The translations under genes and the position numbers were made by a program. A DNA stretch of 63,986 nt, filler included, from Octopus bimaculoides (Eukaryota): assembly GCF_001194135.2 (NCBI RefSeq). It is 7 parts of 7 records of this genome, joined end to end, with 100 filler letters (N's around TTAATTAATTAA, not from the genome) between each part and the next. Parts side by side here need not be neighbours in the genome. Positions count along the whole stretch, not along the records: positions 6,234 to 21,680 come from NC_068992.1; 6 more parts are not named here. One strand, written 5' to 3'. This document shows positions 12,090-21,632 of the stretch, piece by piece. Each line of letters starts with the position of its first letter. Positions within the stretch are counted from its first letter, which is position 1. Below the pieces are notes generated by a model. That model was not told the DNA's origin. It searched no databases and saw only the letters and a program-made list of their open reading frames with translations.

Positions 12090-12205
12090 CTACATCCACA
12101 ACCTCCAAATGTCTGCCACAGCAACACCAACACCAACAGCAAGAAAAACACCAACGATAACGCCGATAGTAAGATTACTTGACGATGTCACGCCATTTGT
12201 GGGTT
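12090..12205 (-). CDS. Putative juxtamembrane plus transmembrane exon of the lectin receptor
   Basis: ttctctattacag|AA... Reads (E)PTNGVTSSSNLTIGVIVGVFLAVGVGVAVADIWR, with a 20-residue hydrophobic run. It either splices at a weak AG|gttgtg donor (exon end 12103) or reads RLWM* to a TAG at the gap edge. Confidence 0.6.
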
Positions 12206-12228
12206 CTGTAATAGAGAAATGTGGTAGC

Positions 12229-12303
<75 letters not shown>

Positions 12304-12759
12304 ATAAAATCATGCCTCATAGCAGAGCAGGATATCTAGCAAAAATAATCACAGATGTTAATTCTCTCAGAGGTGCCAACCATGTGAAGATCAACAATCA
12401 ACAGTTGAGCCGGGTTGGACATATTTAATGAAGTGAGCATCAAGACTTTGATTAGAAATACTAATGTGGTGATGAGAAGATAAGATTAGATCAATGAATA
12501 TTGTTATCATAATGTAAATGGTTACAGCAAGTGAGGGAGACAACTCAGGTTTGTTTCGGACCTATTCACTTAATAACTGTTGGTTTTCATGCAGATGGAG
12601 GTAGTACAACCGTAGCATAGCTGGAACTGCATCTCAAAGACTTGCCTTTCGCTTTAGGTTCAGAAGATGTTTCAACTCCAACCTCTACTGATATTCTACA
12701 AGGCTCAAGTAAGGGCTACGATAGAATACTGCTCCTACATGTCACACAGGGCAGCTGCT

Positions 12760-13500
12760 ACGCACACACAAACATTCTGAGCCGCAGCCTCTAATCTTCT
12801 CTCTCTTTTCTATCACTACTATAATGGCTTCTGTTGATTGGCTTCTTCCACCACTCAGGCACGCCTAACCCAACTTGTTTTGCACCCTTCATCACTGTTG
12901 GTGCCTCAAACCCCACTATGTCCAGTCCTATTCCCCAAGAACCTCCTCCGTCCGGTTGAATCCCAGTAATCTTCTCCGTACTGTTCAAGTTTTTCTTGCA
13001 GGTGTTGAGCAACAACAGAATATAAACTCTATCAAGCTTTGATCTCAGAGAACCTGCAAAGACCGTGGGCATGAAGTTCCGTACACTAACATCCTGGATC
13101 GCATCCAGAGAAGGGCTACTTGACTAACTGGAATTTAATCACTAATAAATACACTCCTCCAGCCTATGATCCACAGTTGCATAGACCATAATAGATTCAG
13201 GACTTCCATACCAGGGTCAACGCTCATCCCGTAAGTTATGCCTAAAAGAAGCATTCCACATATTAAAGCACAACTCTTCAATATTACTAAATAAGTATAG
13301 TGAGGCTCTAGGTACATGCAACTACCACTTTTTTCATACCTTCAGATTTTGCCACGAATCTAAACGCAACCTAAATCACCACACAATACATATACCGAAC
13401 ACCCTTTTGGTAATCTCAAACAACCTTGTTTGACTTTACAATGTCTTAATTTTTTAACTTTCTAATTTTTAATTTTAATGTTTTAATTGTTTAATAATAC
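12760..13500 (+). mobile_element. Composite decayed LINE 3' fragment plus Penelope-like 3' fragment
   Basis: Remnants SLFYHYYNG and ILDRIQRRAT. Segment 13170-13490 is homologous to 27670-27940. Confidence 0.5.
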
Positions 13501-13530
13501 ATATATAAACATATATGTATGTGCATGTGC

Positions 13531-13584
<54 letters not shown>

Positions 13585-14051
13585 ATAATATTAGGGACAA
13601 AATCCAAAATTACAGGTAAAAAACTCAATTAAAATCAATTTATAAAAAATTAAAATTAAATTGAGCCTTATAGATAAAGTATATATAAAATATATAGTTT
13701 TAGGGAAAATAACCAATTTTCAAGAACTCATCGATGAAAATCCACTATCACATATAGAAAAATTAATAATTAAAAGCACAATAAATGAGTATAATATAAA
13801 GTAAAGTAAATATCATAAGATAAATATAATATAATATAATATAATATAATATTATATTTATCTTATGATATTTACTTTACTTTNNNNNNNNNNNNNNNNN
13901 NNNNNNNNNNNNNNNNNNNNNNNNNNNNNNNNNNNNNNNNNNNNNNNNNNNNNNNNNNNNNNNNNNNNNNNNNNNNNNNNNNNNNNNNNNNNNNNNNNNN
14001 NNNNNNNNNNNNNNNNNNNNNNNNNNNNNNNNNNNNNNNNNNNNNNNNNNN

Positions 14052-14082
<31 letters not shown>

Positions 14083-14616
14083 TGTATATGTGTGTATATA
14101 TGCATACATATATGCATACATATATGCATATGGGTGTAGATACATAAGCATACAGGCGATATAATAGTGCATATACACATTTATATGTATATACGTACGT
14201 GCGTGCATATATCTACATACATGTCTTTCTCCTTTCTGATTCATCAGCCCCCCGCCCACTATCACTTTACCTAGTACAATAAATATATACGTCTATTTTT
14301 AGAAGCTTGACCATTATATCTTATTATTCTTCCCTTTTTTGAGGTTTACTTCTCACTTTAGTACATTCACCCGTACCATTTTCTTTTCCTATCCCTCCAG
14401 CTTGGTGCCTTTCAAAAAAATCACACCATATAAAGGGAAATTCCGCCGTACTTGACTTTGCCTTTAATCCTTTTGGGGTTGATAAAGTACCAGTTGAGTA
14501 CTGGTGTCGATCTAATCGACCTATCCCTCTCATGAAACTGCTGGCCTTGCCCTAAACCTTGAAAGCAACGTGTACCCACACACACACACATACATACATA
14601 CATACATACATATATC

Positions 14617-14707
<91 letters not shown>

Positions 14708-14763
14708 GATAAATGACCTTCTCTGAGATTATGTCTTGAACAGATTATTCAAGATCAAATATG

Positions 14764-19279: not shown

Positions 19280-19528
19280 GCAACAACACTGGCAACAGCA
19301 GCAGCAGCAAAGTGGAAACATTTCTGATCGCTCCATCCACTAGAAATAGTAATCAAAGCAATTTGCCCTCCAAATTACATATTCTATAGCTTGAAAGAGA
19401 AAAGACACGTTGCAATGATACGATGTTGGTATACTACTCGTATGTCTAAGTCTAAAATCAGATTGGTCATGGTTAGAATGTACTTCATCATAGGTATGGT
19501 CTCTGAGCTGAGGCTAAACAGCAGCAGC

Positions 19529-19589
<61 letters not shown>

Positions 19590-19709
19590 AGACATTCTGT
19601 AAGATTCAAAGATATTTGTTTATGAAACACAAAAGAGTAACATTGTTGCATGATATATTGTGACGGGAATATAACAAAGAAGAAAGAAAACGAACACGAA
19701 GCTACTTAC

Positions 19710-19892
19710 GGATGACTTCTACTTCACACAAGGACAAAGAGGCGTATTTCTTGGCTGTTTGGATACAAACACTTTCACCAACCAACGGACGTTGACAAGA
19801 TATATAAAGAATACTTTCAGTTGACTTGCTTTTGTAGCATAACTGGGAACATGGATTGTTTTTGTCCCCGACAAATACATTCAAACTGTAAA
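19710..19892 (-). CDS. F-type lectin domain, C-terminal half exon (183 nt, phase 1-1)
   Basis: tttccattag|TT...ATCC|gtaagt. Reads (L)YSLNVFVGDKNNPCSQLCYKSKSTESILYISCQRPLVGESVCIQTAKKYASLSLCEVEVI, ending in the hallmark LSLCEVEV. The acceptor was chosen for phase compatibility; a second AG lies 7 nt downstream. Confidence 0.83.
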
Positions 19893-20499
19893 CTAATGGA
19901 AATAAATGACTAAAGTAGAACCTTGCTGCTTATGCATTTTAAACAAATATATTTTTGGTCTGTCAAGAGGTGAAGTCAGTGTTTAGAAAGATTAAAATGA
20001 TTTGATTTCAGAAACGTAAATTAATTCCACTGCAGATTGAGTACAGAAATGTGAGGTAGAGTGTCGTTTTAAGGTATGGACAGTCTGGGCAATTGCCCAG
20101 AGATCGTCATAGGTCAATGGGTCCATTTCGGATCTATGTGGCTTGCCAATAAATAATTACTAATGGACCCCGTGCATTGATTTGCCCGGGGGTAAATCAT
20201 TGCTACCAAGATAGCCCTGGTGAGGTATGAAATAACATGCAATAAAGCATTAAGTTATGTTACTTTACAACCATGTATGTTATCAATGAATAGTGGTTTA
20301 CTTTCTTTTAAACAACAAATAGGAATTTATATCAACATGTAGTGTTTAAAAGGGGGGGGGGTGTAAAAATTATCTTCTTTTCACAAAGCAACTATGTCGT
20401 TGTGTATTGTGGGAGCAACAGTTGATAAGACAACAGTAAAAGTATGGCGTGAACGCAGATATAGCAGTTAAGCAGTTCACTTCACCGAATGAAGACAGT

Positions 20500-20810
20500 G
20501 GAAAAGCTCATCATTGAAGCTCTATTTGCAGATTACTATGTTCTGATGGCACACAAGGAAAATTACCGTAGTCCATTGTCGACCGGTTTGCAGAAGCGTC
20601 AAAGCTCTTTAGACTGAAACATCAGCCTTGAGAAAACGGAAGTCGTTGTCAAAGCAGTCCCCCGAACGAAATTCGTCACCAGGCAAACATCACCGCTGAC
20701 GAAGTCCAGCTGAAGTGTTTTGAGAGATTCAAGTACCTTGGCTGCACAATTTCAGGCGATGGATCACTGGACAGCGAAATCTCTTCCAGAATCCACTAGG
20801 ACAGCCAAGG
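20500..20810 (+). mobile_element. RTE/BovB-like RT fragment
   Basis: Remnants ALFADY, SLEKTEVV and FKYLGCTISGDGSLDSEISSRI. Confidence 0.7.
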
Positions 20811-20869
20811 ACTTGGAAGACAGACATACACAAATATATGCATGAATATATGTATTTATCTGTATGCAC

Positions 20870-20926
<57 letters not shown>

Positions 20927-21254
20927 CGTGCTTGTGTGTGCGTGTAGATCGGTGTGGGGCCGATATAATGGGTTAAAATATTGAAGGCGGTGCTCCAGCA
21001 AAGCCGCAGTCTTATGACGAAAAAAGACTTACAAACACAGAAAACACTGATTTCAAATAATGACACAGCGCCACAGATTTCGTGCGGAGTAGTGATGGGG
21101 GTAGCGGCAGTAAATTATATTCACAACCTCCACCCGGACTTGACTAAAGCCACCCGGATACTTTGCGCGTATTGATTGAATAAATTGACAGTTTTACTTT
21201 AGGTTGGTACTGCTACTTAAGGTATACCACATAACTGCCTGTGGTGACAACACA

Positions 21255-21317
<63 letters not shown>

Positions 21318-21380
21318 CACCACATCCACAACTACTAAACAATCTGTGTTTTGCCTGTGGTTAAAAAGTTCTCTACTTAC

Positions 21381-21632
21381 GGAAGAAACTGTGAGTGTAT
21401 ATCCTAATCTGGTTTATAGTATAATTCCTGTCCAGTTTCACATACCAATAACTTTTGCTGGGTTTTTCCTTCGTGCGACTACACGACTTGTGCTGGAAGT
21501 TTTGGTTGTATTTGCCATCCACAGCAAAACTTGCTGTGGCCAAATACTTGGAGCTGCAAAGGTTGTCACCATCCAGGAAATTAACTTCAAAATCAGACGA
21601 CTGGAAAGCTGGTCGCCCAAGGGCAATATTTT
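21381..21632 (-). CDS. F-type lectin (FTP/fucolectin) domain, N-terminal half exon (252 nt, phase 1-1)
   Basis: atatttcag|AA...TTCC|gtaagt. Reads (E)NIALGRPAFQSSDFEVNFLDGDNLCSSKYLATASFAVDGKYNQNFQHKSCSRTKEKPSKSYWYVKLDRNYTINQIRIYTHSFF. Matches the NxALGxPxxQSS / AVDG / CxxT / WxVxL / IxIY pattern. Confidence 0.85.

What the first reader, a model, noticed from the sequence alone, without database searches (positions are those of the whole stretch)
12090..21632. Hidden four-exon receptor gene (F-type lectin, EGF stub, TM) with a remodelled sugar-binding site
Seen: four minus-strand exons with GT-AG sites join in phase 1 to give about 215 aa (FTP domain, CxxGFYGxxC module, Ser/Thr linker, 20-aa hydrophobic helix). 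Two of the exons are not in the ORF track in their coding frame. Known: F-type lectin domains bind fucose through H-x26-R-x-D-x4-R, and molluscs expand FTLD-EGF immune receptors. Here the His site reads CSRT rather than CxHT, and the RxD...R loop is replaced by YTHSFFLYS, while the AVDG metal motif and the structural Cys pairs remain. There is also an insertion (EVNFLDGDNLCSSKYL) and three extra cysteines. Inference: a non-canonical FTLD surface protein that binds something other than fucose.
Basis: partly seen in the sequence, partly recalled or inferred. Interest (0 to 1): 0.75.

Follow-up and report, generated by a model that had tools for sequence, protein, structure and literature searches.

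The report
Octopus membrane protein, degenerate fucose-lectin domain
The four exons are real, but they are the back half of an already annotated Octopus bimaculoides gene (LOC106871222) for a membrane protein whose lectin-type domain has lost its fucose-binding residues; it belongs to a larger cephalopod family, and at least three of its exons are hidden in assembly gaps.

Summary
All four minus-strand exons, their GT-AG sites and phase-1 joins reproduce exactly. They encode an F-type lectin domain (FTLD), a truncated EGF, a Ser/Thr linker and a TM helix. The gene is not hidden: RefSeq XP_014773059.1 (LOC106871222, O. bimaculoides, 372 aa) contains these exons at 100% identity, after four upstream exons. 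Comparison with the gap-free O. sinensis orthologue shows all four gaps in the finding lie in introns. The 'stop' at 12092-12090 is the start of an intron (AT|GTAG). A 22-aa tail exon maps into gap 9627-10126. A β-region exon and a full EGF exon map into the 2-kb gap just upstream of the piece. The F-type fold is confirmed (AlphaFold2 pLDDT 85.5; best PDB matches are all F-lectins). The fucose motif is not met: His52→Arg, Arg79→His, Asp81→Phe, Cys83-Arg86 deleted. The side chains at the Ca site and two disulfides remain. The CDR1 insertion, its Cys and the FTLD-EGF junction are shared by cephalopod paralogues named 'MEGF10/draper/fucolectin', two with phosphatase tails. Frames are preserved, the FTLD evolves near-neutrally, and the stalk/TM exons diverge faster than their introns. 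The ligand is unknown. This is a modestly interesting variant of a known kind.

The parts
21381..21632 (-). FTLD exon a, phase 1 in and out. Encodes ENIALGRPAFQSS ... IRIYTHSFF. Contains the CDR1 insertion with Cys26, the AVDG cation motif, CSRT (Arg at the His52 site) and His81 at the Arg79 site.
   Evidence: splice sites, frame. (100% identical to XP_014773059.1). (alignment to 1k12). (94% nt identity to O. sinensis L003 12106-12357).
19710..19892 (-). FTLD exon b. Encodes LYSLNVFVGDKNNPCSQLCYKS ... LSLCEVEVI(Q). The exon junction falls inside the former Arg79-Arg86 sugar-binding loop. Reading through its donor gives EVEVIRK*.
   Evidence: Paralogues break at the same exon boundary. (94.5% identity to L003 13887-14069).
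15700..15807 (-). EGF-stub exon, CREGFYGSFCQHQCDQSSGNC + TLGTHQKNDSNTFQ. It carries 4 Cys, where paralogues carry a full laminin/MEGF-type EGF. The O. sinensis orthologue keeps only 2 of them.
   Evidence: Diverges faster than the flanking intron (15/108 vs 23/444 mismatches, P=0.003).
12094..12205 (-). Linker + TM exon, EPTNGVTSSSNLT + IGVIVGVFLAVGVGVAVADIW + RLW(M). Ends in phase 2 at AT|GT.
   Evidence: The O. sinensis exon L003 26243-26357 ends AT|GTAAGT and splices to a tail exon. Diverges at 20/110 vs 12/282 mismatches in the upstream intron (P=4e-5).
12090..12093 (-). GTAG: a probable splice donor at the contig edge.
   Evidence: O. bimaculoides TGGAT|GTAG+N against O. sinensis TGGAT|GTAAGTAGG.
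9627..10126 (-). Assembly gap, inferred to hold the last coding exon: a cytoplasmic tail of about 22 aa, KRRQKQPVDVNDNKDLEMKLVK* in O. sinensis.
   Evidence: window 10334-10127 matches L003 27706-27888 and 9626-9533 matches L003 28393-28491. The tail exon L003 28195-28263 lies between them. tblastn finds no tail exon in the assembled bases. Inferred, not seen.
14765..15539 (.). O. bimaculoides-specific insertion in the intron between the stub and TM exons. It contains gap 14924-15309 and an ORF whose RRLRWYGHVVRM motif looks like a retroelement tail (recognised from memory; Pfam found nothing for it).
   Evidence: window 15540 matches L003 22820 and window 14764 matches L003 22809, so the segment has no counterpart. 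ORF seen; no Pfam match.
15808..19709 (-). Intron between FTLD exon b and the stub exon, with gaps 16614-16819 and 17665-17911. Collinear with O. sinensis on both sides of each gap. No relic EGF exons found.

Best explanation
The finding is the 3' half of Octopus bimaculoides gene LOC106871222 (chromosome CM046612.1, about 49.5 Mb).

Gene product. It encodes a type-I membrane protein with these parts, in order:
- a signal peptide, a Cys-rich region and a β-region (upstream of the piece);
- one full EGF (hidden in a gap);
- an F-type-lectin-fold domain, a 4-Cys EGF remnant, a Ser/Thr linker and a TM helix (the four window exons);
- a short basic tail (hidden in gap 9627-10126).

Family. It is a divergent, shortened member of a cephalopod family of FTLD-EGF-TM surface proteins. 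Sources name the paralogues MEGF10, MEGF6, draper or fucolectin-5, and two of those scanned carry a cytoplasmic tyrosine-phosphatase domain.

Lectin domain. The jelly-roll, the side chains at the AAA Ca-ligand positions (identified from memory) and two disulfides are kept. The fucose-binding motif is dismantled:
- His52→Arg;
- Arg79→His;
- Asp81→Phe;
- the Cys82-Cys83 pair is lost (Cys82→Phe);
- Cys83-Gly-Glu-Arg86 is deleted.

Inference on function. The domain no longer works as a canonical fucose lectin. It more likely acts as a surface recognition or adhesion module for another ligand (a protein or a different glycan). With a tail of about 22 aa, the protein would need a partner to signal.

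Shown: gene structure, fold, motif loss, family membership and frame conservation. Inferred: ligand, topology and function.
For: Gene structure:
- Exons and splice sites reproduce.
- 100% match to XP_014773059.1.
- Whole-gene exon map on L001.
- Collinearity of the whole piece with the gap-free O. sinensis orthologue L003, with all splice sites conserved.
- Hidden exons are located by their flanking alignments.

Fold and motif:
- Pfam PF22633 just above its cut-off and PDB F-lectin hits.
- AlphaFold2 mean pLDDT 85.5, pTM 0.81.
- Foldseek ranks 1-11 are all F-type lectin domains, with target-normalised TM 0.71-0.85 for the single-domain entries.
- Residue-by-residue alignment to 1k12 and a 33-sequence alignment.

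Family:
- Shared N-terminal region, source names, and PTP domains in P0037 and P0114.
- A CEVEV-CxxGxYGxxC junction in 32 of 168 relatives.
- Of the relatives whose triads I listed, only this orthologue group lacks all four motif positions.

Still coding:
- No indels in 435 nt of FTLD exons against 5.1 expected from the intron rate (P=0.006).
- All indels in the stub and TM exons are in frame.
Against: - I have no transcript evidence. The 15-billion-protein collection holds no other sequence clustering at 90% identity with this protein or with its O. sinensis relatives (cluster sizes 1, 2, 1), so no transcript-derived copy showed up.
- FTLD ω is 0.78, not distinguishable from neutral.
- The Cys count is odd.
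- The EGF stub loses two more Cys in O. sinensis.
- The O. sinensis orthologue has a 1-nt deletion in its β-region exon.

These last four points fit relaxed constraint. Ligand and topology are untested. The tail exon and the upstream EGF exon are inferred from synteny, not seen in O. bimaculoides.
Confidence: 0.6

Rival explanations
1. The gene is a duplicate drifting towards pseudogenisation. The lectin domain, the EGF remnant and the tail are under little or no selection, and the protein has no specific ligand.
For: - FTLD ω is 0.78, and exon divergence equals intron divergence (25/435 vs 107/1442 mismatches, P=0.28).
- The EGF array is reduced to a stub whose Cys are not conserved between species.
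- The FTLD has 7 Cys, an odd number.
- The O. sinensis orthologue has a 1-nt frameshift in an upstream exon.
- The second O. sinensis copy lacks the stub and TM exons within 10 kb.
- No other sequence in the collection clusters with this protein or its O. sinensis relatives.
Against: - There are no stops or frameshifts in 655 nt of the four exons. Intron indels occur at 1.2 per 100 nt and two-thirds are out of frame (P about 0.006).
- All eight splice sites are conserved.
- The frameshift sits in a T-run of a long-read assembly and may be an error.
- The stub and TM exons change faster than neutral rather than at the neutral rate.
Confidence: 0.2
2. The domain still binds a sugar (fucose or a related deoxy- or galacto-sugar) through a rearranged basic pair. 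Arg53 sits at the His52 position and His81 at the Arg79 position, with the retained Ca site and Phe46.
For: - The alignment to 1k12 shows both positions remain basic but swapped.
- Phe45 and the Asp/Ser/Glu at the AAA Ca-ligand positions (identified from memory) are conserved.
- The R/H pair is identical in all three Octopus copies.
Against: - Arg86, Asp81 (the salt-bridge partner) and the Cys82-Cys83 pair are all gone, and the loop is 4 residues shorter. From memory, that disulfide stacks on the fucose ring.
- CDR1 carries a β-hairpin insertion of about 12 residues.
- Reviews treat comparable substitutions in Drosophila CG9095 as incompatible with canonical hydrogen bonding (PMC5712786).
Confidence: 0.12
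3. The main product is a secreted, TM-less protein made by reading through the donor after FTLD exon b (…EVEVIRK*). The stub and TM exons would then be minor or unused.
For: - The same read-through, EVEVIRK*, is open in O. bimaculoides and in both O. sinensis copies.
- The RefSeq model LOC118765549 of O. sinensis ends that way.
- The stub and TM exons are the least conserved parts.
Against: - O. sinensis LOC115218139 isoforms X1 and X2 and the O. bimaculoides model all splice on to the stub and TM exons.
- Those exons keep their frame and their splice sites.
Confidence: 0.07
4. The exon chain is a chance alignment of ORF fragments, or an artefact of joining across assembly gaps.
For: Four gaps of unknown true length lie between the exons.
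Against: - The order, orientation and splice sites are the same in a gap-free genome of another species.
- The profile and fold matches are significant.
Confidence: 0.01

Closest known systems
Canonical F-type lectins: eel agglutinin AAA (PDB 1k12), striped-bass FBP32 (3cqo) and pneumococcal SpX modules (2j22, 2j1r)
   Same: The β-jelly-roll fold is the same (Foldseek E about 1e-10; target-normalised TM 0.71-0.85 for the single-domain entries). So are the NxAxGxxAxQSS start, the hhDG motif, the Ser/Glu at the AAA Ca-ligand positions, the SC...LCEVEV disulfide and a second disulfide.
   Different: The fucose motif H-x-R-x-D-x4-R/K is not met (R, H, F, deletion). The vicinal Cys-Cys pair is lost. 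CDR1 carries a hairpin insertion of about 12 residues. The protein is membrane-anchored with EGF modules rather than a soluble lectin.
Drosophila CG9095 / furrowed: mosaic transmembrane proteins with an FTLD whose basic triad is partly replaced (PMC5712786, PMC12221842)
   Same: The FTLD sits in a type-I membrane mosaic protein and its sugar-binding triad is degenerate. Reviews discuss this as a possible loss or change of specificity. Furrowed has an adhesion role with no evidence that its FTLD is involved.
   Different: The partner domains there are CTLD and CCP repeats, not EGF. I did not test for orthology. Here all motif positions are changed and the loop is shortened.
Cephalopod FTLD-EGF-TM paralogues, e.g. 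XP_014769031.1 'MEGF10' and XP_052834030.1 'fucolectin-5' (O. bimaculoides), XP_029644740.2 'protein draper' (O. sinensis), and Argonauta and Acanthosepion proteins
   Same: They share the N-terminal Cys-rich region, the EGF before the FTLD, the CDR1 insertion with a Cys, the FTLD split into two exons at the same point, the CEVEV-CxxGxYGxxC junction and a TM helix. All lack Asp81 and the Cys-Cys pair.
   Different: The paralogues keep Arg79 and often His52 and Arg86. Most of those read have 2 to about 10 full EGF repeats after the FTLD (one short form has a single EGF) and longer tails or a PTP domain. This gene has only an EGF remnant and a very short tail.
Vertebrate MEGF10 / Drosophila Draper (the names given to the paralogues)
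   Same: Single-pass membrane proteins with CxxGxxGxxC-type EGF modules.
   Different: Neither Pfam scan found an EMI domain. There is no EGF array here, and no NPxY or YxxL motif in the O. sinensis tail. An FTLD is not part of MEGF10 or Draper (from memory). The names are similarity-based labels driven by the EGF repeats.

Membership tests
F-type lectin domain (FTLD) superfamily | F-type β-jelly-roll fold | tested here: met
   AlphaFold2 model with pLDDT 85.5 and pTM 0.81. Foldseek PDB ranks 1-11 are all F-type lectin domains: 2j22, 2j1t, 1k12, 3le0, 3cqo.
F-type lectin domain (FTLD) superfamily | Sequence-profile match | tested here: met
   PF22633 scores 29.3 bits against a cut-off of 27.8, so only just above it. 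PF00754 is below its cut-off. phmmer gives 3cqo 3e-6 and 1k12 1e-5. The SMART FTP model was not available.
F-type lectins (functional fucose binders) | Fucose-binding motif H-x24/26-R-x-D-x4-(R/K) | tested here: not met
   In AAA numbering His52→Arg53, Arg79→His81, Asp81→Phe83, and Cys83-Gly-Glu-Arg86 is deleted. The motif definition is from PMC5712786.
F-type lectins (functional fucose binders) | Cation-binding motif hhDGx (x = N/D/S) plus Ser and Glu ligands | tested here: inconclusive
   AVDGK: the hhDG part is kept but x is Lys. Ser50 and Glu141 align with AAA Ser49 and Glu147. Which AAA residues are Ca ligands is from memory. Ca binding itself was not tested.
F-type lectins (functional fucose binders) | Three conserved disulfides (AAA 50-146, 82-83, 108-124) | tested here: not met
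   Cys51/Cys140 and Cys99-or-103/Cys117 are retained and the vicinal 82-83 pair is lost. Extra Cys are at 26, 127 and one of 99/103. Pairings are inferred from alignment only, and the AAA pairings are from memory.
F-type lectins (functional fucose binders) | Measured binding of L-fucose or fucosylated glycans | not testable with these tools
   Needs recombinant protein and a glycan array or ITC.
Cephalopod FTLD-EGF-TM surface-protein family (unnamed; labelled MEGF10/draper/fucolectin by sources) | Shared N-terminal Cys-rich region, CDR1 insertion with Cys, CEVEV-CxxGxYGxxC junction, single TM | tested here: met
   phmmer of P0001 residues 1-153 hits P0034, P0033, P0153, P0114, P0026, P0035, P0052 and P0046. 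Alignment A2. Junction census. The TM segment is read directly from the sequence.
MEGF10 / Draper receptors | N-terminal EMI domain, long EGF array, NPxY/YxxL tail motifs | tested here: not met
   Pfam finds no EMI or EGF array. The protein has one stub plus one inferred EGF. The O. sinensis tail KRRQKQPVDVNDNKDLEMKLVK has no such motif. The defining features are listed from memory.

The most novel reading that the evidence does not exclude
Cephalopods carry a lineage-specific family of FTLD-EGF surface receptors, two of the scanned members coupled to tyrosine-phosphatase domains, in which the lectin pocket has been re-purposed for non-fucose ligands. LOC106871222 would be a short-tailed member under diversifying selection: the pocket-rim loops and the stalk/TM exons change faster than the introns. 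It would act as a rapidly evolving recognition, decoy or co-receptor molecule in immunity or gamete/self recognition.
Probability: 0.15. Interest if true: 0.55.

Novelty: new variant of a known kind. Interest (0 to 1): 0.3.

Why it matters
For annotation, the RefSeq model of LOC106871222 is incomplete, and its stop codon is an intron read at a contig edge. The orthologous O. sinensis locus shows where the missing exons are.

For lectin biology, this is a clean example of an F-type fold that keeps its scaffold and the residues at its Ca site while every fucose-contact position is replaced. It sits inside a molluscan FTLD-EGF-TM (and FTLD-phosphatase) architecture that the two F-lectin reviews I read do not list; they mention EGF only for a Nematostella protein.

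If the fast divergence of the pocket loops and of the stalk/TM exons reflects selection, the family would be a candidate set of cephalopod recognition receptors. As it stands this is one weakly constrained family member with no expression or binding data.

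Tried and rejected
- **Tail exon in assembled sequence.** tblastn of the O. sinensis tail against 6234-11468 found nothing. Synteny then placed it in gap 9627-10126.
- **Stub/TM exons in the second O. sinensis copy (L002).** tblastn and motif scans found none within 10 kb. L002 is therefore a partial or rearranged duplicate, not the orthologue.
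- **Relic EGF exons in the introns.** tblastn with eight paralogues against the piece and L003 found only the known exons.
- **Look-up of P0002.** It is not on record. I went through its cluster mate P0155 instead.
- **Large alignment A1.** It was too big to be exported, so I used the stored FASTA.
- **Literature.** Searches for cephalopod F-type lectins and for FTLD-EGF receptors returned nothing specific. Bishnoi et al. 2015 is not in the library.
- **tRNA and Rfam scans of the piece.** Both empty.
- **Pfam on intronic and downstream ORFs.** Only a sub-threshold Transposase_1 hit.
- **Alternative acceptor for the TM exon.** Placing it upstream of the (GTA)25 repeat would add an in-frame poly-Thr. 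I rejected this because the O. sinensis junction (…TFP|ESTTG) matches the proposed one.
- **Disulfide pairing of the extra Cys.** Not checked, because model coordinates are not exposed.

Full report
**1. The observation**

On the minus strand the four stretches 21632-21381, 19892-19710, 15807-15700 and 12205-12090 are bounded by AG acceptors and GT donors. The acceptors read TTTCAG|, CCATTAG|, TCTACAG| and ATTACAG|. The donors read |GTAAGT, |GTAAGT and |GTAATA. Each exon is entered in phase 1, and joined they read 219 codons to a TAG.

The product is ENIALGRPAFQSS…LCEVEVIQ (146 aa), then CREGFYGSFCQHQCDQSSGNC, then a Ser/Thr/Asn-rich linker, a hydrophobic helix of about 21 residues, and RLWM.

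Homology evidence:
- Pfam gives PF22633 (F5_F8_type_C_2) at 29.3 bits, barely above the 27.8-bit cut-off. PF00754 is below its cut-off.
- phmmer against PDB sequences finds only F-type lectins at significant E-values: FBP32 3cqo (3e-6), eel agglutinin 1k12 (1e-5) and SpX 2j22 (3e-4).

**2. Not hidden, and not four exons**

The first homology search returned NCBI XP_014773059.1, 'uncharacterized protein LOC106871222 [Octopus bimaculoides]', 372 aa. It is 100% identical over 100% of the query.

Its locus (L001 = GCA_001194135.2 CM046612.1:49,507,211-49,549,201, reversed) contains the window piece as L001 22401-37847, and the piece is bounded by gaps on both sides. RefSeq places four more coding exons upstream, beyond the piece (signal peptide, Cys-rich region and others).

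**3. The gaps**

*The orthologue.* O. sinensis has two related loci without any N. L003 (LOC115218139, isoform X1 = P0155, 295 aa) is collinear with the whole piece, from 21656 down to about 7132, at 82-90% identity. It is therefore the orthologue.

*The four gaps in the finding.* Each is flanked by blocks that keep order and strand in L003, and no O. sinensis exon falls in the corresponding intervals.
- Gap 14924-15309 lies inside a segment (15539-14765) that L003 lacks altogether. This is an O. bimaculoides-specific insertion carrying a retroelement-like ORF tail.
- tblastn with eight paralogues finds no relic exons in the introns of either species.

So the four exons are continuous in the sense that matters.

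*What the comparison corrects.*
- In O. sinensis the TM exon ends …CTGTGGAT|GTAAGTAGG and splices in phase 2 to a separate exon about 1.8 kb downstream, which encodes (M)KRRQKQPVDVNDNKDLEMKLVK*.
- O. bimaculoides reads …TTGTGGAT|GTAG followed by N. The 'stop' at 12092-12090 is therefore the first bases of an intron at a contig edge.
- The flanks of the O. sinensis tail exon align to window 10334-10127 and 9626-9533. That puts the O. bimaculoides tail exon inside gap 9627-10126.
- The β-region exon (L003 9822-10009) and a complete EGF exon (L003 10742-10888, CPQELFGLDCTHKCRCKNGTTCHQITGHCKEGCEPGRTGSSCQ) fall in the interval L003 9586-12081. That interval corresponds to the 2,060-N gap immediately upstream of the piece.

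The RefSeq protein thus probably lacks about 130 residues. These placements are inferred from synteny, not observed.

**4. The lectin domain**

*Fold.* An AlphaFold2 model built on a 33-sequence alignment has mean pLDDT 85.5 and pTM 0.81. The dips are at residues 21-30 (67), 81-90 (80) and in the EGF stub (below 60). Foldseek against the PDB ranks F-type lectin domains 1-11. For the single-domain entries the target-normalised TM is 0.71-0.85 (2j22, 2j1t, 1k12, 2j1r, 3le0 and others); 3cqo, a two-domain chain, aligns with TMq 0.69. CBM32 modules follow.

*Motif.* The HMMER alignment to 1k12 fixes the equivalences:

| AAA residue | This protein |
|---|---|
| His52 | Arg53 |
| Arg79 | His81 |
| Asp81 | Phe83 |
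| Cys82 | Phe84 |
| Cys83-Gly84-Glu85-Arg86 | deleted |

The fucose motif as defined in PMC5712786 (HX24RXDX4[R/K]; H-x26-R in AAA numbering) is therefore not met. Two of the three triad positions remain basic, but swapped.

*What is kept.*
- Asp39, Ser50 and Glu141 align with AAA Asp38, Ser49 and Glu147. Their role as Ca ligands is from memory.
- Phe46 aligns with AAA Phe45.
- Two disulfide positions are retained.
- The cation motif reads AVDGK, so the 'x' is Lys rather than N/D/S.

*Insertion and cysteines.* Between QSS and AVDG there are about 12 extra residues, modelled as a β-hairpin. From memory, this is where AAA's CDR1 with His27 lies. The FTLD has 7 Cys (26, 51, 99, 103, 117, 127, 140).

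**5. Family context**

A full HMMER scan of 1.84 billion representatives gave 355 hits at E≤1e-3.

*Closest relatives.* The closest non-orthologous relatives that share the N-terminal region are cephalopod proteins:
- 'protein draper' and 'MEGF6' from O. sinensis;
- 'MEGF10' and 'fucolectin-5' from O. bimaculoides;
- 'MEGF11' from Argonauta hians;
- unnamed Acanthosepion proteins;
- a transcript-sized Logan cluster.

UniProt labels several of them 'Fucolectin tachylectin-4 pentraxin-1 domain-containing'.

*Shared features.* They share the N-terminal Cys-rich region with LOC106871222, the CDR1 insertion with its Cys and the exon break inside the FTLD. In 32 of 168 relatives the FTLD ends CEVEV and runs directly into CxxGxYGxxC. 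These include Babylonia and Haliotis proteins.

*Architecture.* Most full members have 2 to about 10 MEGF-type EGFs (one short form has a single EGF), a TM helix and a tail. P0037 and P0114 carry a Y_phosphatase domain.

*Motif census.* Across 581 FTLD instances in these relatives, only 191 have the full H/R/D/R set. All cephalopod family members lack Asp81 and the Cys-Cys pair. Of the relatives whose triads I listed, only the three copies of this orthologue group lack all four positions.

The 'remodelled site' is thus the extreme of a family-wide trend. The insertion and Cys26 are family traits. In alignment A2, Cys127 and the Cys99/Cys103 pair appear only in this orthologue group.

*The EGF stub.* CREGFYGSFC-QHQ-CDQSSGNC corresponds to a family EGF (for example CVPGFYGDMC-KEHSCELCEGAK-CDEVTGRC) with the middle deleted. 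The O. sinensis orthologue has lost two more Cys (QHQYDQFSGEYML).

**6. Evolution between O. bimaculoides and O. sinensis (L003)**

| Region | Result |
|---|---|
| Aligned introns | 92-94% identical overall (up to 96% next to the stub and TM exons); 45 indel events per 3,823 nt, 30 of them not multiples of three |
| FTLD exons | 94-94.5% identical, no indel (5.1 expected, P=0.006); dN 0.056, dS 0.072, ω 0.78, not different from 1 |
| EGF-stub exon | 86% identical; 15/108 mismatches vs 23/444 in flanking introns (P=0.003) |
| TM exon | 82% identical; 20/110 vs 12/282 in the upstream intron (P=4e-5) |
| Stub + TM exons together | ω about 3.7 (binomial P=0.01); indels of 9 and 3 nt, both in frame |

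The reading frame is clearly protected, but amino-acid sequence is weakly constrained in the FTLD. Nine of its 17 replacements fall in three pocket-rim loops; the loops were defined post hoc (P=0.009).

The stalk and TM exons change faster than neutral. Possible causes are positive selection, slippage in the GT-rich TM-coding tract (a period-18 repeat at 12118-12155), or exon-limited gene conversion. I could not separate these without an outgroup.

**7. Interpretation**

*Shown:*
- a real, already annotated gene;
- an F-type fold;
- the canonical fucose motif absent;
- membership of a cephalopod FTLD-EGF-TM family;
- the coding frame maintained.

*Inferred:*
- type-I topology, from the signal peptide upstream, the TM helix and the basic residues after it;
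- loss of canonical fucose binding;
- a role as a surface recognition or adhesion module that needs a partner to signal.

*Rivals:*
- a relaxed, decaying duplicate (0.2);
- residual sugar binding through the swapped Arg/His pair (0.12);
- a mainly secreted read-through isoform, EVEVIRK* (0.07).

I have no expression evidence. No other sequence in the 15-billion-protein collection clusters at 90% identity with this protein or with its O. sinensis relatives.

**8. Comparison with what is known**

Degenerate FTLDs in membrane mosaics are known. Reviews cite Drosophila CG9095 and furrowed as possible loss or change of specificity (PMC5712786, PMC12221842). They also note a molluscan expansion of FTLD architectures, and mention EGF only for a Nematostella protein.

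This gene is therefore a new variant of a known kind, and it is already in RefSeq as 'uncharacterized'.

Noticed in passing
window 12094-12205 and 15700-15807, against L003 26243-26357 and 22550-22666: The stub and TM exons differ from the O. sinensis orthologue 3-5 times more than the introns that flank them (ω about 3.7). Their indels are in frame only. The cause is unresolved: selection, slippage in the GT-rich TM tract, or gene conversion.
   Followed up: partly
L002 (O. sinensis CM016870.1 67.45-67.49 Mb, reversed) and L003 (67.56-67.60 Mb, forward): O. sinensis has two copies on opposite strands, roughly 70-100 kb apart. L002 has intact N-terminal, β, EGF and FTLD exons but no stub or TM exons within 10 kb, and an adhesion-GPCR gene (GPS, 7tm_2) follows it. 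L003 has the full 3' half but a 1-nt deletion in a T-run of the β-region exon, which is why its RefSeq model starts at an internal Met. The EGF exon is 100% identical at the protein level in the two copies.
   Followed up: partly
P0037 (O. bimaculoides XP_052834032.1) and P0114 (CAI9728057.1): Paralogues of this family carry a cytoplasmic protein-tyrosine-phosphatase domain, i.e. receptor phosphatases with an FTLD-EGF ectodomain. The two F-lectin reviews I read do not mention this architecture.
   Followed up: partly
P0004 (Nucella lapillus KAL8585202.1, 2865 aa): The protein has 37 matched stretches, nearly identical tandem copies of only the first half of an FTLD (…ITIYHREKK). Each ends where the cephalopod FTLD exon break lies. 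An EGF and a TM helix follow. This is either an exon-duplication array or an annotation or assembly artefact.
   Followed up: no
window 7280-8450 (+), plus 8079 and 9583: Frame-broken remnants of a mariner-type transposase. The Pfam Transposase_1 hit is sub-threshold (E=0.04) and the …PHLTYSPDVPPSDFYFFP… motif is recognised from memory. A segment of about 100 nt (9626-9533 and 8130-8035) occurs twice and both copies map to the same L003 site. This may be a duplication around the insertion or an assembly artefact.
   Followed up: partly
window 14785-14923 (+), inside insertion 14765-15539: An ORF ending …RRLRWYGHVVRMEEDSCVKKC, which looks like the C-terminal tail of a non-LTR retroelement ORF (recognised from memory; no Pfam hit). 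It abuts gap 14924-15309, and the whole segment is absent from O. sinensis.
   Followed up: partly
window 12229-12303, 21255-21308 and 14617-14707: Perfect trinucleotide microsatellites lie in introns close to exons. (GTA)25 ends 24 nt upstream of the TM-exon acceptor and would read as in-frame poly-Thr if included. The others are (TAC)18, (TTA)18 and (TAG)13.
   Followed up: no
model m6b45df7e9f7b, Foldseek ranks 25-49: Netrin-1 LN-LE fragments match over about 230 alignment columns (TMq about 0.5). This hints that a jelly-roll followed directly by a laminin-type EGF is a recurring arrangement.
   Followed up: no
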